Positions 1,291-61,685 of a stretch of DNA of 64,000 nt are shown here, one piece after another. Made by a program: the position numbers and the translations under genes. The notes below the pieces were generated by a model. It was given only the letters and a program-made list of their open reading frames with translations. It searched no databases and had not been told where the DNA came from. The DNA is from Octopus sinensis. Taxonomy: Eukaryota. The number at the start of each line of letters is the position of its first letter. Positions within the stretch are counted from its first letter, which is position 1. The stretch spans positions 47,616,001 through 47,680,000 of the forward strand of contig NC_043008.1 in NCBI RefSeq assembly GCF_006345805.1, in the 5' to 3' direction.

Positions 1291-2811
1291 AAGTCTGTAT
1301 ACGAAATTAAAATGACAAAAGAAGAAGAAATAATGTTACGAACTTCATTACCTTACAGCTGTTTCTGTTATAAGATGCAAACCATTCATATTTGAATGAT
1401 TTTGTATCACTCTAAAGCTTCATCGAAGCTTCAAAATGAAAGCGTTACGAACGAAAATGTAAATTTGTCTGCGTTGAATCGTAAATCTATTGTTTATTGG
1501 GTGATTTTGTAGCACTCAGATGTTTTGTGTATCTATATAGACGTTAACAGAGTAAAGAAAGCACTTTACATAGGCGAGATTAGTAGCAATTTGGATTATC
1601 GTTTCCAGAAAACTTTCCATGCTGCCCTTAAAATATGCAAATAGACATTATATCTATAGTCTTTCACCTGAATTCTGTGAGGCTCGAATTAAGACTAGGA
1701 ATTCTGTTCTGTAAATCATATGGATTTGGTGTTCATGTACTGGTTGACTATAAAAGACAGAACTGTCAGCAACTATCGACGACATTTTTTTAAAATACGC
1801 CGATATTTTAAAGAAATGTGTCTGGAGCGAAATACCTGTATGTAATTTCAGGATGAAAGCGTAAGATTTCAAGCAACAATGAGATCTTTTTTGAGACTGT
1901 GGTATGAATTAGTTTTTAAGCTAATTATCCAGAGATAAATGTAGCAATAAAGGAGCTATTTAGAACTGTAAATCTTATTAAAGCCAGGCAGTGAATATCT
2001 GTTTCTTTTCTGTTCGCCAACAAAATGTGAGAGCTGAGTTCAGAAACAAAATGTCACTGCATACAAAAGTATTATGGCCGTCGAAGAGAGAAACTTTGAA
2101 ACGATTAGTTGATGTAAAAAAAAAATGAAGTTGTTGTTGTTTTATAAGAAATAAACACTTGTGAGAATTGGTTTTCAAATTATAGTCTTTGTGAGGTATT
2201 TTTGAGAAACTCGATGAAGTTATTATGCCTCAGCAAGGAGCGGCGGAAGATAATGTCACTCTGATACGTAAATTAAAGGCATTTATGAACAAAAAATTCT
2301 CTTAAAGCGTAAAATTTGGAATATATCGAAAACCAATTCTACAAACAATTCCACTTAACATAGAAAATAACAAATTCGATATATTCGAGTTCTCTTCATC
2401 GCATTAAAACAGCAGATGACACAAAATTCGTTGGAGGTTGAAGACGAATTGATAGAGTGGAGTTTTAAAACTGAATTTGCAAAAACAAATTTGAGAGGAA
2501 TTTAACTCAGTTTGAATTGAGAATCCTATAAAATCTGAAATAACCATGATAACCATATCTCTTTCATATTAATGTGGATCAACATGTTTAGCCTTGACGG
2601 GAAGAGAGTGAAATTATTGCTGGCTGATTAAAAATGGAGAAATATCAAGTCACACGTCGACGCTTCATACCTAACCGTGCCACAGCAGTCAACTTACTCG
2701 GAACATTTGTATAATATATTGTTGATTGATTGATTGATTGATTCTAGTTTCAGCTTATGAGCTGTGGCCATGCTGGGGCACCGCCATTTGGTGTTGCTAC
2801 TTGGTTTCACT

Positions 2812-3483
2812 TCACGAAAGCTTTCTAGTAACTGCCATTTGGTGCATGAGTGAGTTCGATGCAGCTGCCCTCATCTGCCCCTCCTGCCGTGAAGTTGGTT
2901 CATCTGGGACACCTGACAGGAAGAGATCCAGCTTCATTTTAAAGACATCTGCATCCACCCCATGCAGGTCTCTCAGGTTCTTCGGGAGGATATTGAAGAG
3001 CTGTGGGCCTCGGAAGCCCAGGCTATCACAGAATCTTGTCCTACATCTTGATGGCAAGTTTGGAGTCCTAGGCACCACGCAGTGGCGCCCAGTTCTGGCA
3101 TTTGCGTAACTCTCGATTCCAAAGTTCAGGACACATCCCTCCAGGATCTTCCAGATGTATATTATGGCATATCTTTCCCGCCTACGCTCCAGGGAATATA
3201 GTTTTAATCTCTTGAGTCTTTCCCAGTAGCTTACATTCTGCATAGAGGCTATCTTCTTCGTGTAGCTACGTTGGATCGCCTCGAGCTCTGTGATCAACTT
3301 GACACTGGATGGTGACCATAACTGAGAGCAGTAGTCAAAGTGGCTTAGGACAAGTGTCTTCCAGAGGACCATCATGGTTTCTTGTTCTCTTGTTCTAAAG
3401 GTTCTGAGGATCCATCCGGCCAGTCGTCTACATTTCATTGCCAATTTAGCAACATGTACACGAAAGGTCGCGTCATCACTCAT
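2812..3483 (-). pseudogene. LINE ORF2, C-terminal (thumb/CR1-type) region
   Basis: YCSQLWSP...LEAIQRSYTK...ERLKRLKLYSLERRRERY; the stop lies about 70 nt before the tail. Confidence 0.9.
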
Positions 3484-4609
3484 GTAAATACCTAGGTGCC
3501 TCTGGGATTGCTATTCCTCCGGGTCCAGTGTATTCATTGGGTATTGCATTTAGTTTTGCATGCTGATAGTATTGCGCTTGAAACTTTTCAGCATTGAACT
3601 GGATGCTATTCTTTTCGGCCCACTTGTATATTTTGTCCAGCTCACATTGCAGGTGTTTAGTGTCCTCAGGGTTCTGTATTGCCTGTGAAACTTTTGTATC
3701 ATCTGCATAACTTGTGATCGTGGCTCTCTGCGTGGCTAAGGGCATGTCTGAGAGGGCCATTATGAACGGTAGTGGTCCCAGAACAGTGCCCTGCGGAACA
3801 CCGCTCACTATTTGCGTGTTAATGGAAGTGGCCCCATTGGCTACTACCACCTGACTTCTATCTTTCAGAAAGTCATGAAGCCATTCTCCCAGTTTTCCAA
3901 CTATGTTGAGATCACGCAGTTTGTGACATATCATTCCATGATCGACTTTATCAAAGGCCTTTGCAAAGTCGAGATATATCACTTCCACATTTGAGTGGTT
4001 GAGCAGCCGTTTCAGCACCCAGTCATAGTGTTGTAGGAGCTGAGTTAAACAGCTTCTCCCTGGTCGGAAACCATGTTGGGTGTCGGGCAGCAAGTCATTT
4101 TCTTCAAGGAAGGTGATCAGCTTCCTTCTGACTATTCGTTCCATGACCTTGCTGATGTGTGAGGTCAGAGAGATAGGTCTATAGTTCTTGGCTTCCGCTC
4201 TGCTACCTCCTTTATGAATGGGGCATATTTTACCTTCCTTCAGTTTTCTTGGAAGTTTGCCAGCTGCAAGGAAGCTCTGAAAGAGGAACTGCAGTGGTCT
4301 TGCTAGGACTCTCTTACATGCTTTTAGGAGGATTGCCGGGAATCCATCGGGGCCAGTAGCTGAGTCTGTTTTCATTTCATCTATAGCCTTGATTACATCG
4401 TCTTCCTTTATATCGATGTAATCTATCGTCGCCGCCTCTGATTTTATATCTGCAGTGGTAAAAAAGTTAGTTGGATTGGTGATTTGGAGATGCCCAAGGG
4501 GTGGAGTGAAAACACTCTTGAATTGCTCATTCAGTATTCCACTTACCCTCATTGGTTTTCCTGTAAGTGTGCCATCCTTTTCGAAGAGTGGCCCTATTCT
4601 ACAGTGCAC
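3476..4609 (-). pseudogene. LINE ORF2, reverse-transcriptase domain
   Basis: SATGPDGF, NYRPISLTS, QHGFRPGRSC, YLDFAKAFD, GVPQGTVLGP and YADD motifs. A second frameshift lies near 3495 (the DLGIYMSDD frame resumes). Confidence 0.95.
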
Positions 4610-4665
4610 CGTAGCTGTTTCTTTGGCATACCTGTAGAAAGCTCTGGGGTTAGATTTTATGTTGT

Positions 4666-5793
4666 CTATAGCCAGGCTTCTTTGTCTGCTCTTTCTTTTT
4701 CATGGGAGAGTTGCAGACATTTTTCGATTTCCAACAGTTTTATTTTTAGGCGGGACTTTTCACTGCTTTCAATCTGTTTGTTTAGGCGATTTGAAAATTT
4801 TGTACGCCGTCTCATTAAAATTTTCCTCTCTCTGGGGATTTTGTTCTTGTGTACAGTGGCCTTCCTCTCTGGGACACATTTGTAGCATATGGCTTGCATT
4901 ACAGACATGAATTGTTGAGGTTTCACGTCGATGTCTGGCGAGGAGAGACATTCAGGCCAGTTTTGTTCGATGATCTCTTTCTCAATTTGTTTCCAGTTTG
5001 CCTTATGGTAGTTCAAGCTGGAAAGATTCTGAGGGTTTCTTGTAGGCTGCATGTCCGTGCTCTCTTTTGGCCCGTACATGGTCAGCTCTATCATGTTGTG
5101 ATCCGAGAGTAGTGTCGGTGTCACTTTCACATTATGGATGAGATCCATGTCATTTGTGAAGCAGAGATCCAGTGTGTTACCTGTCCTGGTTGGTTGGAGT
5201 ATTACCTGCTCCATGTACAGGGTGTTGATGAGGTTCAGGAGGGACCTCGCCTGTCCTCGTTCACATCTTGTCATTCCTGGGAGAGAAAGGCCCTCGGGCC
5301 ATCTGACATTGGGCAGATTGAAGTCTCCCATAAGAAGTACACTTATGTGTTGTTCTAATGTGGTTAGAACTTCTTCTATTTTTATAAGGCAGTCTTCAAA
5401 CTTGCCCACATGGCTTGGGGCATCTGGAGGGCGATATGTAGCACACACAACTACATCAAGTTGCCTAATATGTACAATTAGTGTGTCACACACCGAGTTT
5501 GAGTATGACAAGAGGACCTGGGGTGTGAGGTCCTCACGGATGTACATAGCAACACCTCCATGACTCCTTTCTTTTCTGTCGGTCCGTAGTACAGCATACT
5601 GTGGTATGTGTAACTCCGCATCTGCTATGTCCGGTTTCAGGTGCGTTTCCGTAAGTGCTATGCATAAGGCTTGATTGCATGCAACAAAGTCTCTCAGGAA
5701 CGGGATTTTTGTCCTGTTACTGAGTGTTTGCAGTCCTCTGATGTTCAGTAGGAGCATCGAGGTGAGGTGTACGTTGTTGCCGGCGGTGTCCAT
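4666..5793 (-). pseudogene. LINE ORF2, apurinic-endonuclease domain
   Basis: LLLNIRGL, ALTETHL, GGVAMYI, TYRPP, GDFNLP, NTLDL and SDHN motifs. The frame breaks near 4670 (1-nt loss: ...EAW/AIDNIKSNPRAFYRYAK). Confidence 0.92.
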
Positions 5794-5837
5794 CCTGGGT
5801 CTGTTTGCTGTGGTGGTCTGGTATATAGTGGGTAGTC

Positions 5838-6335
5838 CTACCTGCGGGCTTGGGTTTGATGAAGCCAGGTCAGCTGCTGTACAATCTTTTGTGCCATGCA
5901 CAAAAAAGATTGTTGCTCAGCAGCTGCCCTTTCGACAACATCATGTTGGCGGTTTGTGGCACGCACAACATCTGCGTACCTCCGCTTTGGGGCAGGTGGT
6001 GCGTGGTCCATCCTTTTTCCTTGTGTTGATGGTTTGTCCATCTGCCTCGTGTCTCTGTGGCAGGGTCCCCGATGTGCAAAGCGGCAGCCTGCACCTTGCT
6101 TTCCATGCCAGCAGGAACCTCTCAGGTAGAACCTACACACCCGTGTGCGCTGTTTGTTTCCATCTTTTGCGGTTCCACTTCTATTCCTGGTTGTTTCACC
6201 CTTTGGTCCTGCTTGAGCTTTTCCTTTAGCTCTTCCAGTCCTTCTTTTAGTTCTTCCTCCTCCCTCTACCTCTTCACCGGGTTCTCCGTCTCCATGGCCC
6301 TTGCTGCCGGTTGGAGAACTTGCACCTGGGTTCAC
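5838..6335 (-). pseudogene. LINE ORF1 remnant with a CCCH-like zinc finger (C-x7-C-x8-C-x3-H at 6072-6137)
   Basis: Translation CRFYLRGSCWHGKQGAGCRFAH after a G/K/R-rich stretch; lies directly upstream of the endonuclease frame. Confidence 0.7.
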
Positions 6336-6444
6336 TTCCCGGGCAGGTTTCTCATTATTATTAAAGGTTTAGGAAGTCTGGCTTCTACGTAATCTATACT
6401 TCTTGAGTTCTATATTCGTATTAATAATATGATATGTTTAAAAT

Positions 6445-12829: not shown

Positions 12830-13892
12830 TATGTGTGTGTGCGTGTGTATGTATGTGCGAGTGTGTGCGTGTGCGTGTGTGTATGTGTGTGTGAGGCGAG
12901 ATAAAAAAACAAAAAATATGTATATGTTAGTGCGTGCAGGGCGAACGGATGACATAGCAAGTCTCGAGTGAGTGGTCAGTGGTAAAAAAAGGGAGGAAGG
13001 AGGGAAGAAGGGAAGGAGGGAAGAAGGGAAGGAGGGAAAGGGTGGGGGCGTATGTAACGTGCCAGTGTGTGTGTTGAGTGGTAGTGTGTGTTTGTCCAGT
13101 GTGCGTAGTTGTGTGTATGGCAAGTAAATTTGAAGTGTGTGTAAGTGTAATGTATATATATATATGCAAATGTGTGTGTGTGAGTGGGTGTGTGTATGTG
13201 TGTGCGTGTGTTTACAAAGAGGGGGGGTTAAGGGAAAAAACTGCAGCGGAGAAGGGGGGAAAGGGGAAGATGGAAGAGTGGTCCCGCGGCGACTGGCGTG
13301 GGAGAACCCAAAGACACGCGCCGGCCCCAGATACGTACAGTAGATCTAGTCGGTCACCCACGACGTGGTGCATGCATGCGTGTATGCGTGCGCGAACGTG
13401 CACAAGCGTGTATGTGCGCGCGTCTGCGAGTGTGCGTGTAAGTATGTATGTGTGTGGATGTGTGAGTGTGTCTGTGTGTAAGTCTGGGTGTCAGTGTGTC
13501 CGATGAATGTATGTAAGTATGTGTGTGTATATGTGTGTATATAGATGTATGTCCGTGTGTGTGTGTGTGTATGTGTATGAGTGTGTATGTATGTACGTGT
13601 GTGTGTGTGGAAGTGTGTGTATGTGCATGTGTGTGCGCGTACATGCAGGTGTGTGAGTGAGTGTGTGTGTGTGTGCATGTATGTGTGAGTGTGTATGTCT
13701 GTGTGTGTAGGATGCATGTATGTGTATGGGTGTATTTATGTGCGTGTGTGTATGTATGTGTACGTGCGTGTGTGTGTGTGTATGCATGTATGCATGTATG
13801 CGTATGCATGTGCGTATGTGTGTGTGTGTGTGTGTGCACGTGTGTAGGTATATATGTCTGTGCGTATAAGTGTGTGTATGTGCGTATATATA
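12830..13892. repeat. Degenerate (TG)n/(TGTA)n field with purine-rich inserts
   Basis: Direct reading; it explains the His/Thr and Val/Cys pseudo-ORFs. Confidence 0.9.
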
Positions 13893-14085
13893 TAAATCCT
13901 TAAATCCTTTAAAATGTTTTAGCCCGAAGGCCGCGGCGATGCTGGGGCACCACTGCTGAAATGAGGAATGGTTACAGCACCCAGGTTTCCCAAGCGATCA
14001 CCCATCTAAGTACTGACTAGGCTCAATGTTGCTTAACTTCGGTGATCGGACGAGAACCGATGCTTTCAACGTGATATGGCCATAA

Positions 14086-14088
<3 letters not shown>
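13893..14088 (-). mobile_element. Candidate 5S-derived SINE (SINE3-like): 5S head, short linker, CR1-type 3' tail and (AGGATTTA)2
   Basis: Bases 13916-13951 match the LINE 3' end 2747-2782 at 26 of 36 positions without gaps; there is a terminal tandem repeat and (TA)n on both sides. Confidence 0.7.
13970..14087 (-). pseudogene. 5S rRNA-derived sequence (118 nt), head of a chimeric retroelement
   Basis: The reverse strand reads GCTTATGGCCATATCACGTTGAAAGCATCGGTTCTCGTCCGATCACCGAAGTTAAGCAACATTGAGCCTAGTCAGTACTTAGATGGGTGATCGCTTGGGAAACCTGGGTGCTGTAACC, a full-length metazoan 5S pattern. It is a solitary copy, has substitutions near box C, and has no oligo-T terminator directly after it. Confidence 0.92.
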
Positions 14089-14147
<59 letters not shown>

Positions 14148-14805
14148 ATATATATTATATATATATATATATTATATATATATATATGTATATATATATG
14201 TATATATACATATAGGTGTGAGTGTCTATATATAATATATATGTGTGTGTGTGTTTGTCTATGTGCGCACGCGCATTAGAGGGTGTGCGTGTGTGTCTGA
14301 TTATGTACAAGTGTTTGCATATGTGTGGGCACTGCACTTAGGAATATTCGCGTTATAAAATCACAAACACTCACACACACACATACACACTCATACACAC
14401 ACAAACCGGTTGTAGGACTTTTATTTGTCATTAATCAATTAATTGTCTGGTTTTTTCACCGCAAAGCAATCATAGAAACACTGACTTCATTTGGAACGGT
14501 TTTCCCGCCATTTTTCTTGCCTGGTGAGTTGCATTGTTTCAAAAAAGTATGAGTTGCGTGATGAAATACTTTAACGAATTAAGTAATTAATTAATTAATT
14601 AATTAATTAATAACCACTAGGAAACAACAGTGTACGCATATATATACATATATATATATATATGCCTTCATTGACAATGTTTGCTGTAAATAAATTATGC
14701 TTCAATACAGGGTGTCATGTGAAGTTCTTTGCAACACATACACGTACAGATACATGCATGCATACATACATACATACATACGTACATAAATGTATACATT
14801 TTACT

Positions 14806-15749: not shown

Positions 15750-17775
15750 CTAAAGCAAAAGAAAAACAATATATTGACAAATCAACTAAAGCATATTCTA
15801 ACCTTGTATTTCTTCCTCGCATTATAACTTCAAGTCTCAATAATATATTGAGACCTTATTTCAAATAATCAAAGCATTATACTTTATATTACAAAACTCT
15901 ATTTCTTTCCTTTGCAACTAAACAACTCTTCTATTAAACTACAATGCACACTTTAGATCCGCAGAGATGCCTGATGCAATTGTGTAAAGGCTATCAATAT
16001 TTCAGTATTTAGTTCTAATATGACCCAGCTCCACTTTCCCTCCCGGTGGAACATCTAAAACGAAATGTTATTATTACTTTCTAGTCAATTCGTTTCGTCT
16101 CTTTCGAAGCAATACCTACCAAAGAGTTTCAATTCAATATTGACGGTTTCTGAAAGCCACATGGGGCCAACAAGTTTTTATTGCCATATCGAATTTCGAG
16201 TGGTTTTCCTCGACTGTAATATGTTAGAATCGTTCCTGTATTTCAATTTATAATTTATTTCTAATATTGGCCCATAGCAACGAAATATGGTGAAATAAGC
16301 GACCGATTAAATCGAGACCAATATTTTATTAGTTCTTATTATACAGAATGTGAGTAAATGAAATTTATAATTGCGTAAAGCGATGGGAGTTGATTTTAGA
16401 AGCTAACGGAATATGCAAAAGCATTTTCTTCGACACTTTGCCATGTACTGCCATATTCTAACTTTCAACGATTCTCAGAAATTAGTCGTTCACAGTAAAA
16501 TGTTTGCAAGAAATAGTTTTGGTATAATAACACCTTTTGGACAATATTAATCTCGAAATCTCACTGAGATATATTGGACCGTATTGTGACTTAATATTTT
16601 CTAATTCTGAACGTAACCTGGTCATTAACCATTGGAAAATATCGGCTGAGATGATGGTTCATCTGGTGTTACGTTTACTACGTTATGTCCGTAGTCATGA
16701 TGATCAGCACATTAATACAAATGGTTCAGGCTATATAATTCGGTAAATATATATGATAAGTGGATGCAAGTAACCTCAATTATTCCTACGGGTTGTATAA
16801 TGTTGCTAAAACTATCAGTAAATATAATTCCAATAATTTGAGCTGCGGAAACTTAAACAATATGCTCACAACTTATGATATCGTTGCTCTGTACTTATTG
16901 CGCAACTGATATTCAACAGCATCAATTGAATTCGGCTTCTAGAGCTTGACATTGATTTAGATCTAAAGTATTTACCGTATGTTTAAAAATTGATAACGTG
17001 TTGTCAGATCACTGATGTATTTAAGTAATTTTATAGTGAAAACAACGCAAGTTAAATGGTTGTCGGTAAAGCAATGCTTCATAACTGAAATGTATATATT
17101 AAAAACTATATCCATAAATATGCTATCAGGATCGAAAAATGCATCGTTTAATCCTTAAAAGTCACGGAATGCATTTGATAATGTACATGAAAATCACTTT
17201 AGCTTTAATTATATTATTTATGAAATACACTCGCTCAAGTTGCAATATTCGTGCGAACCTTAGCGTTTTATTAAAATACATAAAATTATATTTTCATTAT
17301 ATTTAGTCATTTAGGAGGAATTATAAATAAATATCAACACATTTATTTAATATCTTTAAAGAGAAATGATAAGCTATGTGTAAACAACTCATTATTTGAA
17401 TCTTTCTATTTGTGCGTGTTTATGGCAGTTTGTCGCCTCGTTGAACTGTCATTTGATTATTCTTGGTGTTGGCTGTAAAGAGTTACTTCAGACGAGAGTT
17501 CGCCTTTAGAAACGTTATGAATCCACGTTAATGTTATGCCAATTGTTCTTCTGGAATATAACATCTCTATCGCACAAATAGTTTCGTTCTTGGAACATCT
17601 TTCTAGATTTATATATCATGGAATTCGATAAAATTCATAAAAGTATGAGACAGTAAAGGAGGTAGAATATTATTGTGTTTGCGTGTGACGAAGGGAAAGA
17701 GAGAAACAGCCGTCGAAGCCTAGCAGTCCGAAACCTCGGAGTCTCTGGTACCCATCACATCTTGTATATGTTAAA

Positions 17776-17798
17776 TACTACTACTACTGCTGCTGCTG

Positions 17799-17870
<72 letters not shown>

Positions 17871-17888
17871 CACTACTACTACCACTAC
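17776..17888. repeat. (CTA)n tract
   Basis: Direct reading; left flank of the RTE insertion. Confidence 0.95.
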
Positions 17889-18368
17889 ATGCATAAGATC
17901 TGGTCATCAAATCTAAGTAGAGACTTCAAACTTGAAATCTTCAAAGCCACAGTCGAACCAATTCTACTATATGGCTCAGAAACCTGGACGTTATCAAAGA
18001 AGCTTGAGAGGCGGTTGGATGGAACCTACACTCGCCTCCTTATGAGAGCTCAAAATCTCTCGTGGAAGCGCCATCCAACCAAAATGCAAATATATGGGAA
18101 ACTACCACCTGTGTCATCTCTTGTGAAAGGTAGGAGAGTCCAGTTTGCTGGACATTGTTGTAGAGCTGAAAAAGAGGTAATTTCTACCCTTCTCCTCTGG
18201 AAGCCATGTACTCACAATACCAGTGGGCGCAAACTCTCCTACCCTGATGTAATCTCCAGGGATACAGGCATCCAGCAACAGGACCTCCGTAATGCCATGA
18301 TGGACCGTGAAGTCTGGCGTAGCATGGTAAATTACATTGTCTCGACCACGGTCGAACAATGATGATGA
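17889..18368 (+). mobile_element. RTE-clade LINE 3' fragment with an intact reading frame, (TGA)3 tail and a 10-bp TSD
   Basis: FKATVEPILLYGSETW...RRVQFAGHC...DREVW motifs; stop at 18360-18362; CTACCACTAC directly flanks it at 17879-17888 and 18369-18378. Confidence 0.88.
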
Positions 18369-18449
18369 CTACCACTACTACTAATAGTCGTACCACTACT
18401 GCTGCTACTACTACTAAGAAGAAGAAGAACAACAACAACAACAACAAAA

Positions 18450-19022
18450 ATTGGTGGTGGAAGTTTATTTCCCTGTGTAAACGCTGTATAGAGTGTGTCT
18501 TTTATTTGTTGGTTTTTTTCTTTAGTTTCTGTCATTGGATTCATAGTGTCTCGCGTAGGACGTGGGCTATTCCTAGCAGGGTTATTTTTTGGACATTGCG
18601 TAGTGTTGAGGATCCAAGTGGAGTTTCTACATTTTTGTTTGTGTGATTTATCTTTTTTTGTCATGCCCAAAGCCCCACTTCTTATTGGTATTGTTCTTAC
18701 CTTCATGCCCCACAGTTTGAATACTTCAATTTCGAAGTCTTTGTACTTAGATAATTTCTCCACTTCTGTTTTGACATTATTTTGATCAGAAGGGATTATA
18801 ATGTCTATCAGTAAGTGTTTTGCCCCCAATCCTTGGCTATAATGCCCAGGCGATTATCTTTTATTTCTTTGCCGGGTTGGACCGAAATATCCTAGAAGAT
18901 TGTAGCCTGGTTGTTGTCTTGTACCTTGTTTGGCTCATGCTTATACCATCTGTTGTTAGTTTTGATGTTGCAATGTTGGCATATTGTCCAGTGGATATAC
19001 CTGCTTACTTTGTAGGGCATGT
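18450..19022 (-). mobile_element. RLE-type (R4/Dong-like) non-LTR element, decayed 3' fragment
   Basis: Across frames: YIHWTICQHC...WYKHEP...LLIDIIIPSD...EKLSKYKDFEIEV...IP...GALG, a restriction-like endonuclease domain; stops and frameshifts present. Confidence 0.82.
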
Positions 19023-27396: not shown

Positions 27397-27482
<86 letters not shown>

Positions 27483-28004
27483 GAGTGAGAGAGCAGTGCA
27501 TGTCATCAAAGTGACGCTGGGGTAAAATATACGAAGCCCAGTATCCCCATCATGACTACCCGTCTGATAAGGGTACACCAGGCACATGCATCACACCCAT
27601 ATATGTGCGCGATAAGGTGATCTTATATCAAGATAAACAGCGCATGACCTTGCAGGTGGGGCCCATTTAGAATTTTCTCCTGGTCGAGTAGCCCACCCCG
27701 CTCAAAAGTTCCTTGAATAAGGATTGTTTAAGGATGTTTCCAGAGGTGAATTATCCAAACCTCAGAGAATCCCTCTCAACACATGACTATGATGCCTCCC
27801 CGTACTACTTCTGATCGTGATCAGCCACTAAGGGACATGGTCAACTGGTTACGGTCAAACAACTGACAAGCAAATCTTTGGTTTTGAGCAGAATATTTGC
27901 TGTAGCCCATCTTTTATACAAAGACTAAACAATGTACATGATAACACTTCCAATCAGTTAAAATCAGAAGCCACGAGGGCCACTACTTGGTACTGCATCA
28001 GGGC
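27483..28004 (-). mobile_element. Non-coding ~520-bp interspersed element flanked by (TAA)n
   Basis: A second copy at 63808-64000 begins with the same GAGTGAGAGAGCAGTGCATG directly after (ATT)n; no recognisable coding remnant. Confidence 0.8.
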
Positions 28005-28074: not shown

Positions 28075-30017
28075 TCTTTTAATCTGCATGCTTGTTTTAA
28101 TCACTTGCCGGAGCACACCCAACGTCCTAGGGCGAGTGAACAAGGAGAGTTATTACAGTATGGCTGAAAGCTTGGTGAGGGGAAGTATCAGTGGCAGAAA
28201 TATCTTCATGCAATACAACACTGACATTTAAATGGATAGGGGTTTTCTAAGGAAGTAGGCAGTACTTGTCAGCACTCTATTTTGGATTTCTCTGAGGCAT
28301 GTTTCTCTTGGGATCTTACCTAGAAGTTTCTGACATCCCGTTTTTATCATACGTAGGGCACCTACACTAACAGGAATAATTCTTGCTTTAAGATGCTACA
28401 TCTTTTGTATTTCAATTTCCAGGTCCTTATAATTACTTAATTTGTCAAATTCTTTTACAAACATATTTTTATCAGTGGGAACACTTGCAGCTATTAATCT
28501 ACAAGTATTTTCTTCTCTATCCTTAATGACTGCTTGGATTCTATGCCATCCGATCAATTTTGACCACAACACCAAACATAGTCTTCGGAAATATTCTATC
28601 CTCAGTTGTCCTTTCATTTCCTTCTCCATGATTTAGTTGAATTCTGGTATGCCAACGTATTTGCAGCCTTCCATTTTAATTAGTTTAATCAGTTCTCTAC
28701 TTGGTAATTCTACCCCTGATAGGGACCGTACCTTGCTTCTTTTCAGGTACATTATGCCACACTTCTTGAGTCCGAATTCCATTCTAATATCAGCATTAAA
28801 GCAGTGGACCGTGTTCACGTCTTGCCTCTCCGTAAAATGTCAGCCCAGTGTTTCACCCCACCATACTTCTCTTCAGAAAACACGTTACATTCCTCACAAT
28901 TCCAATCAAATCTAAGCCTTCAGTTATCCACGAATGTGGAATCATATCATATATTTACGATAACCAATCCAAGCCATTCCCAAGTTTGTCCTCTTTCCAT
29001 TACAATCTTACATTACCATTTTGTCTACCAAAAATTAGTCCTTGGCACCTCTGCATTCCCTCCTACAACTTTTATGTTCTGTCGATAACATATCGTTCTC
29101 ATCAAGAAAAATGTACAGTTCTTCTGAAAATGTCTCCTGACAGTAACTTCCACATTAATGGGAGGTAATAAATTGGCCCTTAATGATCGGCAGTATTTCT
29201 TTTGGATGCATCCTTCAGATACAACCCTTCGCCCTTTTTGTTAGCCCGGGATTTCTTCTTCTCTATCGATCAATGCATTAAATTGCTCTGCGATCAAATT
29301 GCTTTTTTTATCCGAAATCCTTGGACACCATTCGATCCTGTTGCTTTCCAATTGCTTATCTTGTTACTCATATTTCTGAAACGGTCTACTCCGAATTGGA
29401 TATCCTCTTGCTGGGAATAAGAAGCTGTTTGCTTCATGCTGCAGAGCCATTCAGCTGTAGTATTATGCTGTTCTTGCTTACTCCATATCTTACCCCAAAA
29501 ATGTCGACTTTCATCAACATCAGGAACTAATCTTTCACATTCTTTATCATAATTAATTTCTTGATAAAAACTTTCTTGGTCGATTCTAAACAATTGGCTT
29601 TGCTGCTATTCTTTAATCTGTTGTTCAGACCTAATTAGCTTTGCTTTTTCGGCAAGTATACACTGCTTCAGTTCATTAATTACAGCCTTCAGGTCTTTTG
29701 TATGTACACCATACATCATCAGTTTTTCAAATTTGCGATCATTCTTCAATTCTCCTTTTCTTTTCCTGACACGTTTTGACCCTGCACTATTCGGAAACAC
29801 TATTCTTGTGAAATCCTCCTTTCCCACCAGGGTTGTTTATTTCCTCATTTATCCATCGATGTTCTGTTTTCAATTGATTCCCATCCCATCCTTTCTGTCG
29901 CAATCCTACTTGCAGCCTTGATAAGTTGAATTGTTTCTGTGATGTTCTTTTCTTCGACTTGTTCCAATACACTATTGACTTTAATTGTCTCTTGATATAG
30001 TCTCCATCGGTTAGACT
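28075..30017 (-). mobile_element. RLE-type (R4/Dong-like) non-LTR element, decayed and internally deleted
   Basis: Fragments FWGKIW...NWKATGSNGVQGF (RT N-terminus), DIRMEFGLKKC...YVGI, EYFRR-x-x-LVL-x-SKL, then a jump to SVPTDKN...KLSNYKDLEIEIQKM (RLE); (TAA)n at the 3' end. Confidence 0.85.
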
Positions 30018-31273: not shown

Positions 31274-31374
31274 TATATATAAAATATTATTAGAGACAAA
31301 ACCACTATTTTGCAAAACAAACAAGGAAAGACTTAATCAATACATAAAATTTTAATAAATAGTCAAAAAAACCG

Positions 31375-31417
31375 CCACTACAATCATTTCTTGTCTTGAT
31401 CGACAATCTTCAGGTGG
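31375..31417 (-). ncRNA. Minimal type I hammerhead motif (left arm)
   Basis: Same motif on the reverse strand with position 15.2 C>U (GAAAUGAUUGUA). Confidence 0.74.
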
Positions 31418-31467
31418 ACTTCCAATAAGTCAGTTTCAATTAAATTTGAAACTGACTTATTGGAAGT

Positions 31468-31510
31468 CCACCTGAAGATTGTCGATCAAGACAAGAAACG
31501 ATTGTAGTGG
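31468..31510 (+). ncRNA. Minimal type I hammerhead motif (right arm)
   Basis: CCAC-CUGAAGA-UUGUC(GAUCAA)GACAA-GAAA-C(GAUU)G-UA|GUGG: canonical core, 4-bp stem I, 5-bp stem II; ACGAUUGU is self-complementary with G-U wobbles. Confidence 0.8.
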
Positions 31511-31718
31511 CGGTTTTTTTGACTATTTATTAAAATTTTATGTATTGATTAAGTCTTTCCTTGTTTGTTTTGCAAAATAGTGGTTTTGTCTCTAATAATA
31601 TTTTATAATATTTTACAATAAAATTGGATTTAATCCTAAATCTGATTTTTTTCCCTGTAAATTTGGATTTATTCCCTAATATTTATTATTATATATATAT
31701 ATATATAGGTATACATAA

Positions 31719-31842: not shown

Positions 31843-33639
31843 CAATGTCTTGCAATCTAGCCCAGGTTAAATAAGTTTAACACTGATGCGCTGGTTTGGC
31901 CTCATGTATCAGAATATAAGTCCAGCTAAAAGAAATCAAGAAATCCCATTTGCGAATCGAATTCTCATCTTTATTAGTAACTTCAGTGAGAGTTAAGACC
32001 AGAGATTAGAAGAAAAATATTGAGACGATGTATAAACCGCTACATTCAGAGAAATGGAATTGTAGATTTAGTTACATTTCCTTTTGATTATATTAGACAA
32101 TCTAATCAGAGATGACAATAATAGAAGATTCCCGGAAAACTAATATAGGTTATTTTCATTCATGAAGTAGGTAGGTTGAATTAGAGATAAATTTGTATAT
32201 TGCTGTAGCCATTGTTAGATTGATTTTCGCAAAATGTAATGCGATTCATATTCTTTCATTCAAGCTATATAAGATGTTTTGTTTTATGTTTTTTTTTTTT
32301 ATTTTGGTTACTTTATTTCTTTCTTGGTTTCGAAAAGGATCTTTGGAATAAAAATTTGAATTGAAGAATTACAAATAAATAGAAGTTAATGGTTTTAAAT
32401 GGAAGAAATAAAAAAGAAGAAAAACAGAAGAGAAAAGGAAGCAGTCAAAGAAAATGGTACATTTTCAGAAATATTTTCGGCATATGATATCTATACTATT
32501 GTCAATTAAAGTATTTCTAGCGCTCTAAGACGAAATTTGAACTTGAAACCATTCCAATTGTTGACGGCAGTGTGTCCAGAGCACTACAAGCGTCATCTCT
32601 TAAACTTTTAAAGTCAAATGGATTGAGAGTATTATCAGCACTACAGTTTCTGCAAGTTTTTATGGCCAAATCTTTCGTGTATCGAACCAGCAATATCTCA
32701 TAAATCGTGTACGGTACTGAATGTTTCCAATTCCGTTCTCTTTTACACATTATCAGTTTTCTGTTTTTAGTGAAGATCAAAAGAATTGCTGAGAGTTAGG
32801 TGTGAATTTTCATTTGACACGAAATCGTGAGATAGCAGTAGACTTAGGAGTGAAACCACTTTCAAAACGCAGAGCACTACGAAGATTAAGTTTTATTTTC
32901 CTGCCCTCATTATTTTATTACGTATTTCACAGTTGTTTTGTTTCTATTTCAAATAACGTAACAGGTTGTCAGACACGGGAGTCGGTAGTCTTCCTTCGTA
33001 AAGTCATTGCTACAAAGAACAAATGAAATGGCTGTGAAAGGGAGTGAAACCAGAGAAGGCCGAAGACCTGATGTTGCGATCTACACTGTTGACATTTTAA
33101 ATATTGGTCACTCTCGTTTCTGTGATGGTGATTTAGGATCGACAGAATTGTTTCAATTACCTGTTTCAATTATTTCAATTATTTTAACGTTAATTTCAAA
33201 AATGAAATCTGATCAACTAAAAAAGGAATTGCACTTAAAATCTGAAGAAACGCGAAGCATGGTGCCGAATGTGACCACCACTACCAACACCCCGGTTATG
33301 CACCGAAAGGAGCACTGCTTGTGCACTTCTAAATGTTGTATCGATGAACTTAAAATCACGATGTCGGTTGAAAATGATTTACAATAGAAAAGAACCAATT
33401 GAAGCTTTGTGAAGTATTTTGTGTCGAGCGTCCTCGTTAGCACAAATCCTTCCAGCCGTGCAATTGGATATGTAGTACTATATACAATCGTTTGGTTTGA
33501 TAGACGACCGACGTTGTATTAATAATGGTTATTGAATACAGACATATGGGGTCTTTATTTATTGGTTACATTTAGAAATAGACACTTTTGTCAAGATAAA
33601 ATTGGAAAGCTATTATAAAGACTAAAGGTATGTCCTTAC

Positions 33640-33819
33640 GTTGGCAAGCTTTATCTCCAAATCCACCATATCACTCATGTCTTCTTCAGCTGTCTTCGGG
33701 TCGGCCCCAAAATTGATTGCCATCTGAACGGCGAGCTTTTCATAAGCCTTTAATTTGGTATCATTGCGACCTTTCAAGTAATACTTTTGCCCAGGCATTC
33801 CGAAAGAAGGTTGATCGAT
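33640..33819 (-). CDS. M13 peptidase exon (180 nt; IDQPSFGMPGQKYYL...LEIKLAN)
   Basis: tttgtag|ATCGAT...GCCAAC|gtaagg; 60 codons, phase 0-0; absent from the supplied ORF track, read directly from the reverse strand. Confidence 0.94.
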
Positions 33820-35070
33820 CTACAAATCATATTGAAAAGGAAAAAAATAAATCATGAAAGAAAGAATGAAATTTGTGCGTTTAAACTTCATTTATAGACA
33901 GGTGTTATGGAAAATGCGCAAAATGTATCATATGCGTTCCTTAATCAGAGCTGTTCATTTCTGCAATATGGTTCTCCACATTACATTATGCAAGAATGCA
34001 TGCTGTTTTAGACCATGAAGACGTTTGTAGTGACATTGTTGCTGCGTTAGACGATATACTCCTCTTCCTTCCATACTTCATGACTCTTTGTAAGTGTGTA
34101 ACAGGAAAATGAAGTCTGCCTTGAGTGCTTATGATGGCTTCCACTCGACGTTTTAATTTCAGTTTTATATCTTATGATATATGATGTGATATATATTATA
34201 TATACATATACACATACATATGCATGTTTGTGTATGTGTATGCACATATATATGTATTTGCGTATATATATGTGTTTATATATTACATATGTTTATACAT
34301 AAGTATGTGTGAGTGTGTGCGCAACATGTGCATTTATATATATGTATGTGCATGTGTTTGTGTACGTGTTGATGTCTGTGTGTGTATTTGTGTTGTACGT
34401 TTTGGTGTGTGTATGTGTGTGTGTGTGTGTGCGTGTGTGTGTGTGCATGTGTGTGTGTATGTGTGTATGTGTCTATATATGTCCGTGTGTATTAAATGCA
34501 TCATACTGTGACAAGAATTTAAAACATTATAAATGCTGAAAATTACGCTTCGATATTCTCAGAGCAGCAACTCATTAGCCCAGTCGCAACCATATTATAA
34601 GGCCACGCACTTTTAACCACGTTTTAACAATTAAATAGTAATGGCGACTGTTTATATATCCTACATTAAGACCAAGGGTTCTTCGACCAGCAGTTCCCAT
34701 ATACGTAGTTGCCTATTTTACTGCAACACACGCAACAAGCGTCTTCTAATCGTTGGCGTCTTGACATCAATAAAGAACTGATCTCGAAGACAGGGTTTGG
34801 AAGTCTTGTAATCTATTGAATAATAAAGTTTTCACTGAAAACTTTGCCTTCTTGTTCTTTATCGAGTACAAGAAGCTTTGGTGGAAACAATCCAGCACTA
34901 AATTAATCTCATAAAATGAGCTGAAATTGTCACCGGAAGTTGGTGGAATGGGCGTTTCTTAATTGTGCAAAGTCTACCAAAGAGAAACTAACAAAACTGT
35001 AACCTGAAAATCAGGAAACAAAGGATTCATTTAGCTTCGAAGTGTGAATAATTTTCAAACGATTACTTAC

Positions 35071-35276
35071 CGAGAGTACATGACTAGTGGAGTTCTTATT
35101 GTTTGAGCGAACTGCAATGTGAATTAAAGGCTGACAATTGTATTTTCTTAACGATGACAGTAAATTAACTAGACTAAAATTATTTATATCCCTACTGTTG
35201 TACCGTACTGGCCAATCACCAAATTCTCCTCTCAGTACTGTTTCAAATTCTGCTAAACTGCGTTCTTCGATTAATG
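35071..35276 (-). CDS. M13 peptidase exon (206 nt; LIEERS...GDWPV...KNSTSHVLS)
   Basis: ttttcgcag|CATTAATC...CTCTCG|gtaagt; phase 1-0; GxWP and KNS motifs. Confidence 0.92.
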
Positions 35277-38022: not shown

Positions 38023-38136
<114 letters not shown>

Positions 38137-38241
38137 AATGTGAACTTAAGAAACAGACATATATACATATATATGTGCGTGTGCATATATTTCATCTATA
38201 TCTACATTTATATTATATACATACACACACACACACACACC

Positions 38242-38275
<34 letters not shown>

Positions 38276-39817
38276 ATATATATATAGTAAATCAAGTGTA
38301 AGCAATGTATCGACTTGTGACTGATGAAACAGGGAATTACCCCTGCAGTGATGTTTTCTGACGCAAAAGGACGCAAGAAAAGTTTTTAGGAATTTTAACC
38401 AGTGCGCTACCGATTTTGCCATCAATTCTACTTTTCTGATTGTCGATGCATGTAGAGTTAACGAGAAAATGTGATCGATGGCTAGTTCGTTACGTGTATA
38501 ATTCTGATGGCATCAATTCTGTCTCTTTAATGAAGCAACAATATATATATATTAAAGAGAAAGATGATAAGTCAACTGTATAATATCTGGCATCATATTA
38601 ATATTGTTTCTTTGTTCCAATATTAATGTTCATTGACGTATTATGAAAAAGGTAATTAGCAGCTTATAACCGTTAAGTAGATTCTCTAGTGTTACCTGCC
38701 GCTGGAATGTCTCAGATTTTTTTTCTTTTTCATCCCGTATATCCCCCCACCTTATCTTTGATGCGAAACATAATTTGTAGAAGTATTTAGTTTAATAGAT
38801 CAATATGTACACTCAATATAGTAATCAAATGTTTCGTTTATGTGTTCGTCTGCGGATATTTTATGCTTTACTTTAAATATAAGATGACTATATCTGATCT
38901 GTAAGCAAACGGAAACTAATGTCAGTGAATATAGATTAGAATTATCGTCGTTCCCCAAAGAATGTCGTATATAAAGCAGCAGACCTAGTTTCCAAAGTTT
39001 GCCGTTTTATTTTGGAATGTCTTTAAACAGCGGCACTAATGTTATTGAATTCTCTAAGACAGAGGATTATTGAGTTAAATCAATATACAAATTTAATTTC
39101 AGGATGATAATCCAACTTAAGAGAAGAAAAATATCTAAAGTAAGAAGGTAAATATTTTAGTTCCAGAAGTACAAGAAAAAAGGCAATTACTGTTTGGTAT
39201 TGAGCAAAAGTTATAATCGTATTTTACTCTCGCAACATCACACGTGCATCGGTGTAGCAGAGTAAATACTTTAAAAGATCATTGCACGTGAAATGGATGC
39301 CTGGTTTCACATGTGTGTTTTTGTGGGGGGATTTGTGTACGTATTTACAATATCTTATCCTGTACGATCGGAAGAGCAGCACGAATATCTCCTACGTCCG
39401 ATATGTAATAAATTCTGTTTACATAAGAAGAAAATAAAACAGTCCAGCAGTCCGTACAAATATAACTTAATCCTAACATTGTCAAGTATTATTTTACGAC
39501 TGTGCGCTTCCTACGACTCAATTGAACTTTATACAAGAACCAACCGCGTGGAGTGAAACAATAAAAATAACAAAAGAAAATTATACAGGAATCAATTTCC
39601 AATTTGCTTTCTTCGAGCCTTGAAAGAACGGCAAACAAAATGCTATGTAAACGCTAAAGCAAATGTATCAGCTTGCTTTTAACCAAGTTCTTGCAATCAG
39701 ATTAGAAATACATGACAATATTACGACAATACGACAATATATTTGAAGCGTAAATGCCGAGCTCAGCTTTATTGCAATACATACCCAACATAGCGATATA
39801 TATATATATATATATAT

Positions 39818-39885
<68 letters not shown>

Positions 39886-43270: not shown

Positions 43271-43290
43271 ATGATGATGATGATAATAAC

Positions 43291-43339
<49 letters not shown>

Positions 43340-43384: not shown

Positions 43385-43437
<53 letters not shown>

Positions 43438-52969: not shown

Positions 52970-54226
52970 GTGTTGTGTGTGTGTGTGTGTCTGTCTGTGT
53001 CTGTGTCTGTGTGTGTCTCTGTGTGTGTATACATATACATATACATATATCTGAAGCAGCAATGGAGTGCCGTGCGATAGAATTTCGATATGTTTCCAAA
53101 TTGCTATGTCGGATTAATTACACAGCCTACATTTAAACCAAATGCCAGGCTTAGCTTATTTTGTTATTAATCCCTGTTAATTTTAATTCCAGCTTCGTTT
53201 CTTCAATCATAATATCGTATAAGGATACAACAACACATTTAATAACACTTCTATAACAATGTCTAAACGTTGGAGTAAATATTTTAATGTTTCTCGTGTG
53301 TCAAGCGATCTTACTCGTATCTCTTACTTGTTTTAGACTGTAAGCTGCGGCCAAGCTTGGGTGCCACCGTTAGTGTTACTACACACTCACTACCCGCCTT
53401 TGTTAACATGCCAAATAATTATTACATTCCTAGCCACATTTTCATAATATGAGGATGTTTATTATCTTTTTCTCATTTGCATAAATCTGGGCAATAAATT
53501 CCCTCTTCCTCTCAAGCTCACCTTGACATTTCAAATAACAAAATGCAGTTTCTATAAACCTATATTTCAACCGAATCACTTTTAACATGCCGTAATTCTC
53601 CATTTAGTGCCGAAATTAAAGCATTCTTCCATAAAACGTACGTTTGATCGCAATCTTCAACCGATTTCACAAGTTTTGTAGGTTATCAGATATTCTCTGG
53701 CAAATTTATTCAAGTATTTCTCATTTCCACATGAAAAGAGAATTGTTCTTTGTAGAAAAGGCAATTTCTGTTCTGCCTTTATATGAAGACAAACCTTTTA
53801 TCGAAGTGTGAAGTAAAAAAGAAAATCCGAAGCACGAAAGAAAGGGGACGCTAGTGAAATAATCAATAGAGTGAAGTAATTTCGTATCCATCAGGAATCG
53901 GCGCTATTTGGAACTGCTCTGATGTTCACACGTAAGGCAGATTAAACCAAAAGACATTTCTTTCCAACAGCTCAATCAATAGCGACGTCCTTTTAAGCGA
54001 TTGGTGTCAGACTTTTGAATCATGATTATATTAACGGATCTGATATTCCCAAATTTACTACTTTTTTCCTTTTTTTTTTTAATCCACGAATTCTTCTGGA
54101 AACCCTGTCAATCTGAGGATGAAATGGAATACAAAATCCTAAGAAATTAATTTACGCATAAAAATGTAGCTCAACTAAATTTCATTTTACTCGGGAATTT
54201 TGTCTTCGATTTTCAAATTGTTTACT

Positions 54227-61374: not shown

Positions 61375-61462
<88 letters not shown>

Positions 61463-61483
61463 TTCATCTTTTATCTGTTGCTC

Positions 61484-61685
61484 GTTTCAGTCATTAGGCT
61501 GCGACCATGCTGTGACACCGCTTGCAAGAATTTTTTGTCGAATAAATCGACCCCCAAGTTTTTGATTCAAGCCTGATACTTATTCTATTGGTCTCTTACG
61601 GAGACGTAAACACAATAACATCGGTTGTGAAGCGGTGAGGAAAGCATACACTGACACACGCACACACATACAGGCATACATATAT
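61484..61685 (-). mobile_element. 3' part of a second SINE family with a CR1-type tail
   Basis: GTTTCAGTCATTAGGCTGCGACCATGCTGTGACACCGC resembles the LINE 3' end at 2747-2784; the family assignment rests on recall of octopus SINE sequence. Confidence 0.65.

What the first reader, a model, noticed from the sequence alone, without database searches (positions are those of the whole stretch)
13893..14088. 5S rRNA head fused to a CR1-type 3' stem-loop: candidate SINE3-like family
Seen: a full-length 5S sequence is followed, with no terminator, by a ~20-nt linker and a 36-nt segment matching the resident LINE 3' end (26/36). It ends in (AGGATTTA)2 and sits in (TA)n. The mismatches cluster in a hairpin and preserve it: LINE CAGCU-CAUA-AGCUG versus GGCC-UUCG-GGCU here, which includes a U-A to C-G swap and a cUUCGg tetraloop. 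Established: zebrafish SINE3 combines a 5S head with a CR1-like tail, and LINE RTs of this group recognise a 3' stem-loop (eel UnaL2/UnaSINE1). The octopus SINEs I know of are tRNA-derived. Inference: because its tail and terminal repeat differ from this LINE copy, the element more likely belongs to an amplified family than to a one-off template-switch chimera.
Basis: partly seen in the sequence, partly recalled or inferred. Interest (0 to 1): 0.78.

Follow-up and report, generated by a model that had tools for sequence, protein, structure and literature searches.

The report
5S rRNA copy fused to LINE tail
A complete 5S ribosomal RNA copy is fused to the short 3' "recognition" end of a resident jumping gene (LINE), which makes it a retroposed hitch-hiker element of a known general type (a 5S-headed SINE, or a one-off chimera); it is a modest addition to the catalogue, not a new mechanism.

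Summary
A full-length 5S rRNA (Rfam 98.9 bits, model 1-120) lies on the minus strand at 14087-13969. No T-run follows it. A 17-nt linker and a ~40-nt segment come next, and this segment is the conserved 3' module of the resident LINE lineage (27/38 identical to the LINE copy at 2.7 kb). The element ends in (AGGATTTA)2 inside (TA)n.

The module forms two adjacent hairpins, not one. The substitutions in the 5S element keep or improve both, with U-A to C-G swaps in each and a cUUCGg loop. Three related LINEs from ENA metagenome contigs and two other non-autonomous copies in the window carry the same module.

So this is a 5S head joined to a LINE-type tail, made by LINE-mediated retroposition. I could not test whether it belongs to an amplified family, because no collection available here holds the source genome. 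All searches for a second junction were empty.

A published RepeatModeler table lists about 1,095 (O. bimaculoides) and about 996 (O. vulgaris) copies classed "SINE/5S". This makes a family the likelier reading (~0.6) over a one-off template-switch chimera (~0.3).

This is a new member of a known kind, of moderate to low interest.

The parts
13969..14087 (-). Complete 5S rRNA-derived head (119 nt). It carries the internal Pol III control region. One helix-I pair is broken (C2/C118).
   Evidence: Rfam RF00001, 98.9 bits, model 1-120, E 2.3e-20. It is the only 5S hit in the window at E<=1.
14088..14088 (-). One extra G between the upstream (TA)n and 5S position +1. It could be flank, a non-templated addition or an upstream start; this is undecided.
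   Evidence: Sequence reading.
13952..13968 (-). 17-nt linker TTCCTCATTTCAGCAGT. It has no T4 run and no detectable similarity to the resident LINE, to L001-L003 or to the other tail-bearing copies.
13936..13953 (-). Hairpin 1 of the LINE-type 3' module: GUGGUGC-CCCA-GCAUCGC, a 7-bp continuous stem.
   Evidence: Predicted in the element and in all four LINE tails. It is in the consensus structure with covarying pairs 7-28 (CG:2, UA:2, GU:1) and 10-25.
13921..13932 (-). Hairpin 2: GGCC-UUCG-GGCU, a 4-bp stem with a cUUCGg tetraloop. It is homologous to CAGCU-CAUA-AGCUG of the resident LINE.
   Evidence: Pair 33-39 reads CG:5, UA:1, UG:1.
13916..13953 (-). The whole conserved LINE-derived module (GGTGCCCCAGCAT...GGCTAAAAC).
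   Evidence: The 13-mer is exact in only two places in the window. Identity is 27/38 to the resident LINE and 29/38-39 to L001-L003.
13911..13914 (-). TTTT, the first possible Pol III termination signal. It lies after the hairpins and before the terminal repeats.
   Evidence: Sequence reading. The same AAACATTTTAAA stretch is present in the LINE tail of L001.
13893..13908 (-). Terminal 8-mer repeat (AGGATTTA)2, the 3' end of the element.
   Evidence: Related LINEs end in 8-mer repeats of other sequence.
14089..14214 (.). (TA)~64 at the 5' side of the element. TATATATA at 13885-13892 at the 3' side is a possible (TA)n target-site duplication, but it cannot be told apart from the microsatellite.
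2729..2786 (-). 3' module and (TCAA)n end of the resident LINE. The LINE body extends to 6368 and is defective: ORF2 is split over three frames.
61455..61528 (-). The same 3' module at the end of another non-autonomous, SINE-like copy (partly decayed).
   Evidence: nhmmer and blastn, sequence, alignment.
53305..53375 (-). The same 3' module at the end of a short element (decayed). It shares G at column 28 and A at column 43 with the 5S element.

Best explanation
The 196-nt element is a retroposed, non-autonomous chimera. It consists of a complete 5S rRNA copy, a 17-nt linker, the two-hairpin 3' module of an octopod LINE lineage, and an 8-mer terminal repeat. Most likely it is one copy of a SINE3-type (5S-headed) SINE family.

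Proposed mechanism:
- RNA polymerase III starts at 5S +1 from the internal box A/IE/C promoter. This step is inferred.
- Because the 5S terminator is missing, transcription reads through the linker and both hairpins. The missing terminator is shown; the read-through is inferred.
- The reverse transcriptase of a LINE with the same module binds the hairpins in trans, primes on the terminal repeat at an AT-rich nick, and copies the RNA into a new site. This step is inferred by analogy with UnaL2/UnaSINE1.

The founding event would have been a template switch from a LINE or SINE RNA onto 5S rRNA.
For: Shown here:
- The 5S head is full length with no T-run after it.
- The tail is homologous to the LINE 3' module.
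- The module forms two hairpins. They are conserved across the resident LINE, three related LINEs (L001-L003) and two other non-autonomous copies. 89% of cells are paired, against 21-43% when the partners are slid, and 3 pairs show changes on both sides.
- The element's own substitutions keep both hairpins.
- At least two other non-LINE copies in the same 64 kb use this module, so it works as a mobilisation tag in this genome.
- Head and tail are adjacent and in the same orientation, with a chance probability of about 0.002.

For a family rather than a singleton:
- 1,095 and about 996 copies are classed 'SINE/5S' in two Octopus genomes (PMC8967140; arithmetic).
- About 24,000 5S-derived loci are reported in giant squid.
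- An element met by chance in one window is far more likely to come from a class of about 1,000 copies than from a handful of one-off chimeras. This last point is inference.
Against: - No second copy of the junction was found anywhere I could look: the window, protein-space searches with six-frame translations, and metagenome, viral and prokaryote contigs. These collections evidently lack the source genome, so the negative result carries little weight.
- The link between this element and the published 'SINE/5S' counts is not shown.
- The 5S part is complete to both termini, as expected for a copy of mature 5S rRNA.
- A TTTT lies between the hairpins and the terminal repeats. It would cut many Pol III transcripts short of the repeat that the RT is thought to prime on.
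- No LINE with an (AGGATTTA)n end was found.
- The target-site duplication cannot be read inside (TA)n.
Confidence: 0.6

Rival explanations
1. A one-off chimeric retrocopy. During target-primed reverse transcription of a LINE (or tail-sharing SINE) RNA, the RT copied about 76 nt and then switched template to a mature 5S rRNA, copying it to its 5' end. The product was never re-transcribed or amplified.
For: - The 5S is complete from +1 to about 119 and abuts the 3'-terminal part of a LINE-type sequence in the same orientation. This is the architecture of template-switch chimeras, which prefer small RNAs (Buzdin et al. 2003, as cited in PMC4824008 and PMC4758252).
- The internal TTTT is harmless if the tail came from a Pol II LINE transcript, and the same TTTT is in the L001 LINE tail.
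- No second copy was found.
Against: - Such singletons are rare per genome, whereas about 1,000 copies classed 'SINE/5S' are annotated in Octopus genomes.
- The tail hairpins look tuned rather than decayed: a closed internal loop, a UUCG cap and two compensatory swaps. The parent LINE or SINE subfamily could already have carried these changes.
Confidence: 0.3
2. Two independent neighbouring insertions: a 5S retropseudogene, and a severely 5'-truncated LINE or SINE tail that happens to lie 17 nt downstream on the same strand.
For: - Short tail-only copies do exist in the window, for example at 53.3 kb.
- The 17-nt linker matches nothing.
Against: - The chance of same-strand adjacency within 100 nt is about 0.002 in this window.
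- No poly(A), repeat or target-site duplication separates the two parts.
- A LINE-independent 5S retropseudogene would need its own 3' priming sequence.
Confidence: 0.06
3. A functional dispersed 5S rRNA gene, or a variant that makes a 3'-extended 5S RNA, which merely sits next to repeat debris.
For: The Rfam score is high, the structure is nearly intact, and box A/IE/C-like sequence is retained.
Against: - There is no terminator at the 5S 3' end.
- The helix-I pair 2-118 is broken.
- It is a single copy in microsatellite sequence, probably inside an intron of an M13 peptidase gene, and not in a 5S array.
- The extension is a recognisable LINE tail.
Confidence: 0.02

Closest known systems
SINE3 of zebrafish and other 5S-headed SINEs (Kapitonov & Jurka 2003; fruit bats, springhare, AmnSINE1/Deu-type, SINE3-1_TC, HaSE3 and other lepidopteran SINE3, Aspergillus AfuSINE3)
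   Same: [quoted passage not shown] Such families have arisen independently many times (PMC10886601).
   Different: - The head here is the whole 5S (1-119), and there is almost no body (17 nt).
- The tail comes from a different, mollusc/octopod LINE lineage, so descent from any described SINE3 family is not expected.
- Copy number is untested.
- I found no characterised cephalopod SINE3 in the searchable literature, only automatic 'SINE/5S' counts.
UnaL2 / UnaSINE1 of eel (Kajikawa & Okada 2002): 'stringent' LINE-SINE pairs that share a 3' stem-loop and terminal repeats
   Same: A conserved 3' stem-loop followed by short tandem repeats is shared between a LINE and non-autonomous elements. The stem is maintained by compensatory change.
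   Different: - Here there are two adjacent hairpins.
- The element's terminal repeat (AGGATTTA)n differs from that of the only LINE copy in the window, (TCAA)n.
- There is no experimental evidence of mobilisation.
Template-switch chimeric retrogenes (U6-L1, 5S-L1 and others; Buzdin et al. 2002/2003)
   Same: A full-length small Pol III RNA is fused at its 3' end to the 3' part of a LINE, in the same orientation, as one insertion.
   Different: Those are singletons on L1 poly(A) tails in mammals. Here the tail is a structured module of a stringent-type LINE, and a multi-copy family is plausible.
HaSE3 of Helicoverpa (5S head recombined onto the body and tail of a tRNA-SINE; PMC3272025)
   Same: A tRNA-type SINE-like copy in the same window carries the same tail (61.5 kb). 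The 5S tail shares two states (G at column 28, A at column 43) with the non-autonomous copies rather than with the LINEs. The donor may therefore have been a SINE RNA.
   Different: No SINE body is shared, only the roughly 40-nt module.

Membership tests
SINE (SINEBase definition, PMC3531059) | Short (<1 kb), interspersed, non-tandem repeat | tested here: met
   The element is 196 nt and is single in the window, not in an array.
SINE (SINEBase definition, PMC3531059) | At least 60% identity to tRNA, 5S or 7SL RNA over at least 60 nt | tested here: met
   Rfam 5S_rRNA, 98.9 bits over model positions 1-120.
SINE (SINEBase definition, PMC3531059) | [quoted passage not shown] | not testable with these tools
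   No collection holds the source genome. The literature gives 1,095 and about 996 'SINE/5S' copies in two Octopus genomes, but it is not shown that these have this junction.
SINE (SINEBase definition, PMC3531059) | Extra sequence (body or tail) that sets it apart from a plain RNA retropseudogene | tested here: met
   A 17-nt linker plus a 59-nt LINE-type tail.
SINE3 (5S-headed SINE class) | Internal Pol III control region (box A, IE, box C) retained in the head | tested here: inconclusive
   The region aligns at high posterior probability to the Rfam model. By my recollection of the Xenopus ICR, it matches 9/15, 5/6 and 14/18. No promoter model or transcription data were available.
SINE3 (5S-headed SINE class) | 5S terminator absent, so transcription continues into the tail | tested here: met
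   There is no T4 run between 13969 and 13915. The first TTTT is at 13914-13911.
SINE3 (5S-headed SINE class) | 3' tail derived from a LINE of the same genome | tested here: met
Zebrafish SINE3 family proper | Sequence descent from the SINE3 consensus (shared body and CR1-like tail) | not tested
   No Repbase, Dfam or SINEBase library was available. The tail is that of a mollusc LINE lineage, so membership is not expected.
Stringent LINE-SINE pair (UnaL2/UnaSINE1 type) | Shared, structurally conserved 3' stem-loop | tested here: met
   There are two hairpins. 89% of cells are paired against 21-43% when slid, and 3 pairs change on both sides. Only 7 sequences were available, so the statistics are thin.
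Stringent LINE-SINE pair (UnaL2/UnaSINE1 type) | Same terminal repeat as the partner LINE | tested here: not met
   The resident LINE ends in (TCAA)n. L001-L003 end in (AAAACATT)n, (AAAAGAAT)n and (AAAGAATT)n. No LINE with (AGGATTTA)n was found. The true partner may simply not have been sampled.
CR1 clade (for the partner LINE) | RT/EN phylogenetic placement within CR1 | not tested
   Only Pfam RVT_1 and Exo_endo_phos_2 were shown. An APE-type endonuclease and a repeat-ended, non-poly(A) tail fit the CR1/L2/Rex1-like group but do not place the LINE.
Template-switch chimeric retrogene (Buzdin type) | Full-length small RNA fused 5' of a LINE 3' fragment, in the same orientation | tested here: met
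Template-switch chimeric retrogene (Buzdin type) | A single target-site duplication around the whole chimera | tested here: inconclusive
   Both flanks are (TA)n.
Template-switch chimeric retrogene (Buzdin type) | Junction unique in the genome | not testable with these tools
   As for copy number above.

The most novel reading that the evidence does not exclude
This is a copy of a young, octopod-specific SINE3 family that has not been characterised. Its tail would be a 'tuned' version of the LINE's two-hairpin recognition module: the internal loop is closed to a 7-bp stem and the second hairpin is capped by a cUUCGg tetraloop. On this reading the SINE out-competes its LINE for the reverse transcriptase. 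It would be a natural experiment on what a stringent-type RT reads in its 3' end, in the genome group where SINEs make up about 40% of repeats.
Probability: 0.15. Interest if true: 0.55.

Novelty: new member of a known kind. Interest (0 to 1): 0.35.

Why it matters
5S-headed SINEs are the rarest of the three classical SINE classes, and they have arisen independently in fish, mammals, insects and fungi. A characterised cephalopod example would add a phylum. It would also explain the 'SINE/5S' and 5S-derived loci that cephalopod genome papers report without analysis, including inflated 5S gene counts.

The more useful by-product is the two-hairpin 3' module. It is shared by the LINE, by the other non-autonomous copies in this window and by the 5S element. 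It gives a concrete, mutable candidate for the RT recognition signal that drove the very large SINE expansion in octopuses.

None of this changes how SINEs are understood to work.

Tried and rejected
1. Six-frame pseudo-protein search. I joined all six translations of the junction and tail with X spacers and searched the 5.8-billion-protein set, hoping to catch spurious ORFs called on other copies. Nothing scored at E<=10. A 35-aa junction ORF against 1.84 billion representatives gave two hits, both unrelated tandem-repeat translations.

2. Reaching the source genome through proteins.
- The LINE C-terminal ORF found relatives that are at most 67% identical, all from metagenome contigs.
- The concatenated M13-peptidase exons found nothing.
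- So neither the genome's ORFs nor its annotated proteome are in the collection, and genome-wide copy counting was impossible.

3. Exact-pattern scans.
- A CpG-tolerant pattern for the tail in metagenome contigs: 0 hits.
- A 32-mer from the 3' half of the 5S head in metagenome, prokaryote-genome and viral contigs: 0 hits.
- The LINE module pattern in viral and genome contigs: 0 hits.

4. Literature.
- I found no paper describing a cephalopod SINE3.
- Sequence-string searches found nothing.
- Albertin 2015 and Walker & Doolittle 1983 are not held, so I had no cephalopod 5S reference for dating the head.

5. More distant LINE relatives (L005-L007, about 50% aa identity) have the same architecture, structured 3' UTRs ending in 7-10-mer repeats, but their modules do not align. 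They were left out of the structure count.

6. The whole-element MFE fold is uninformative (z = -0.8).

7. I checked whether the element sits inside the internal microsatellite of a tRNA-type SINE copy. The flanks beyond the microsatellites do not look like one.

Full report
WHAT IS THERE

Rfam finds one 5S rRNA in the 64-kb window, on the minus strand at 14087..13969. It scores 98.9 bits (gathering score 38, E 2.3e-20), covers model positions 1-120, and has only two non-canonical pairs. A permissive scan (E<=1) finds no further 5S fragment and no tRNA.

Read on the minus strand, the locus is:
- (TA)~64, then one G
- the 5S head, ending GCTGTAACC-A
- the linker TTCCTCATTTCAGCAGT
- the tail GGTGCCCCAGCATCGCCGCGGCCTTCGGGCTAAAACATTTTAA, then (AGGATTTA)2
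- TATATATA, then CGCACA...

A working 5S gene would have a T-run right after position ~120. Here there is none. The first TTTT is 55 nt further on (13914-13911), after the structured part of the tail. TRF confirms the 8-mer repeat (2.1 copies) and the (TA)64 tract.

THE TAIL IS THE 3' MODULE OF A LINE LINEAGE

A LINE lies at 2729-6368 on the minus strand.
- It has an ORF1 with a weak CCCH-finger hit, an APE-type endonuclease (Exo_endo_phos_2, 6.6e-13) and a reverse transcriptase (RVT_1, 4e-29).
- Its ORF2 is split over three frames, so this copy is dead.
- Its 3' end reads GGCGGTGCCCCAGCATGGCCACAGCTCATAAGCTGAAACTAGAA(TCAA)n.

The 13-mer GGTGCCCCAGCAT is exact only there and in the 5S element. 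Over the module the two are 27/38 identical.

nhmmer with either tail also picks up two more minus-strand copies of the module, at 61.5 kb and 53.3 kb. The 61.5-kb copy ends a SINE-like element with an internal TG/TA microsatellite and no LINE coding sequence. From memory it resembles the very abundant octopus tRNA-type SINE; this is a lead, not a test. So at least four elements in 64 kb carry this module. With so few copies, the chance that one lies within 100 nt downstream of the only 5S, on the same strand, is about 0.002.

RELATED LINES ELSEWHERE

The LINE's C-terminal ORF finds 1,332 relatives, but the best are only 63-67% identical and sit on short ENA metagenome contigs. Three of these were fetched (L001-L003).

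They have the same module directly after the stop codon: GGTGC(A/T)CCAGCATG(G/A)CC(A/T)CAGCC-loop-GGCTGAAAC. It is followed by 8-mer repeats: (AAAACATT)n, (AAAAGAAT)n and (AAAGAATT)n.

The 5S element's tail is closer to L001 (37/47, including an identical AAACATTTTAAA) than to the resident LINE (28/46). Sister subfamilies of this LINE with different terminal repeats therefore exist. One with (AGGATTTA)n is a reasonable but unobserved donor.

More distant relatives (L005-L007) keep the architecture but not the sequence.

STRUCTURE

RNAalifold on the seven tails, and single-sequence folds of the element and all four LINE tails, give the same two adjacent hairpins: ((((.((((....)))).)))) followed by (((((loop))))).

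On the alignment, 89% of cells form standard pairs, against 21-43% when the 3' partners are slid by 1-3 columns. Three pairs have changes on both sides. With seven sequences this is suggestive, not strong.

The element's differences from the resident LINE fall in these stems and respect them.
- Hairpin 2: U-A becomes C-G, A-U becomes G.U, one terminal pair is lost, and the loop becomes UUCG.
- Hairpin 1: U-A becomes C-G at the outer pair, and a G-to-C change closes the LINE's 1x1 internal loop into a continuous 7-bp stem.

HOW IT MOST LIKELY WORKS

Shown: the element has a Pol III-type head with no terminator, joined to a structured LINE 3' module that other non-autonomous elements in the same genome also carry.

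Inferred:
- Pol III initiates at 5S +1 from the internal control region and reads into the tail.
- The RT of a LINE that owns this module recognises the hairpins and primes on the terminal repeat, as in the UnaL2/UnaSINE1 model.
- The junction itself was born by RT template switching from a LINE or SINE RNA onto 5S rRNA. This is the route proposed for 5S-headed SINEs and for chimeric retrogenes (PMC4824008, PMC4758252).

One wrinkle is the TTTT between the hairpins and the terminal repeat. If Pol III stops there, the RNA lacks the repeat. That argues either for leaky termination or for a tail copied from a Pol II LINE transcript.

FAMILY OR SINGLETON?

This is the crux, and I could not test it directly.
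- The window has no second copy.
- The source genome is absent from every collection I could query. Its LINE ORFs and its M13-peptidase gene are not in the protein sets.
- Translated-junction searches and exact DNA scans are all empty.

A chimera made on a sister subfamily's RNA would look identical.

What does bear on the question is published repeat annotation. In PMC8967140 Table S2, 'SINE/5S' is 0.0301% of repeats in O. bimaculoides and 0.0387% in O. vulgaris, and 'SINE/5S-Core-RTE' is 0.0214% in O. bimaculoides. With the 3,637,615 elements of Table S3 these give exactly 1,095 and 778 copies, so the percentages are copy counts. O. vulgaris comes to about 996. The giant-squid genome paper reports about 24,000 5S-derived loci, 'likely SINEs'.

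Multi-copy 5S-headed repeats therefore exist in cephalopods, though they have only been annotated automatically. About 1,000 copies in 2.3 Gb gives about 0.03 per 64-kb window, far more than one-off chimeras would give. On that basis I put the family reading at ~0.6, a one-off chimera at ~0.3, two independent insertions at ~0.06 and a functional gene at ~0.02.

COMPARISON WITH KNOWN SYSTEMS

The element works like a SINE3. It meets the SINEBase criteria for length, head identity and extra sequence. It has a LINE-derived tail and lacks the 5S terminator. The copy-number criterion is untested. It is not expected to descend from any described SINE3 family, since these arise independently.

It resembles the UnaL2/UnaSINE1 pairing in having a shared, conserved 3' structure. 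The terminal repeat, however, does not match any LINE I could see. Whether the LINE belongs to the CR1 clade was not tested.

I found no characterised cephalopod 5S-SINE in the searchable literature.

CONTEXT

Exons of an M13 peptidase (Peptidase_M13_N positions 1-195 of 381, E 1.4e-44) lie on the minus strand between 45.5 and 33.6 kb. No catalytic-motif exon is in the window. The gene must therefore continue below 33.6 kb, and the element, on the same strand at 13.9 kb, is probably intronic. This is inference.

VERDICT

This is a new member of a known kind, of moderate to low interest. One BLAST against the genome would settle it.

Noticed in passing
window 33625-45533, minus strand: Exons of an M13 metallopeptidase (neprilysin/ECE-like) gene. 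Concatenated, they match Pfam Peptidase_M13_N positions 1-195 of 381 (E 1.4e-44). The catalytic exons are not in the window, so the gene runs on towards low coordinates, and the 5S element probably lies in one of its introns on the same strand. Neither the word-indexed search of the 5.8-billion-protein set nor any other search found a close relative of these exons.
   Followed up: partly
window 2729-6368, minus strand: A nearly full-length but defective LINE. ORF1 has a weak CCCH/Torus-like zinc-finger hit, which is unusual for CR1/L2-type ORF1s. The APE endonuclease, RT and C-terminal domain are in three different frames. It ends in the two-hairpin module plus (TCAA)n.
   Followed up: partly
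window 61455-61700, minus strand: A SINE-like non-autonomous element with an internal TG/TA microsatellite. It ends in the same LINE 3' module followed by A-rich repeats and (AT)n. From memory it resembles the dominant octopus tRNA-type SINE.
   Followed up: partly
window 53305-53375, minus strand: A short, decayed copy of the same 3' module with no recognisable head. It shares two tail states with the 5S element (G at alignment column 28 and CTAAAAC rather than CTGAAAC).
   Followed up: partly
window 31278-31607: A 330-bp near-perfect palindrome: 162-nt arms, 99% complementary, with a 6-nt spacer. The sequence is complex, not a microsatellite. It could be a foldback or MITE-like element, or a long hairpin RNA source.
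   Followed up: no
window 27434-27609 and 63759-63934: Two copies (89% identical) of a 176-nt dispersed repeat, each next to an (ATT)n tract. The family is not identified.
   Followed up: no
window 17775-18853 and 28399-28632: ORF remnants typical of the region downstream of RT in non-LTR or Penelope-like elements (a weak DUF6451 hit; ...LIDIIIPSD...EKLSKYKD... motifs). They are further decayed retroelements.
   Followed up: no
L003 626-707 (ENA ERZ23499275, XUSH22-1 metagenome): The DNA downstream of the LINE tail looks, from memory, like the reverse complement of another abundant octopus SINE (...CTTTACTACCCACAAGGGGCTA...). This suggests that these 'metagenome' contigs are octopod host DNA.
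   Followed up: no
window-wide: Microsatellite load is very heavy ((TA)n, (TG)n, (ATT)n, (GAA)n and others). It produces about 140 spurious sub-threshold miRNA-family matches in Rfam (mir-297, mir-3149, mir-1277...) and many spurious long ORFs.
   Followed up: yes
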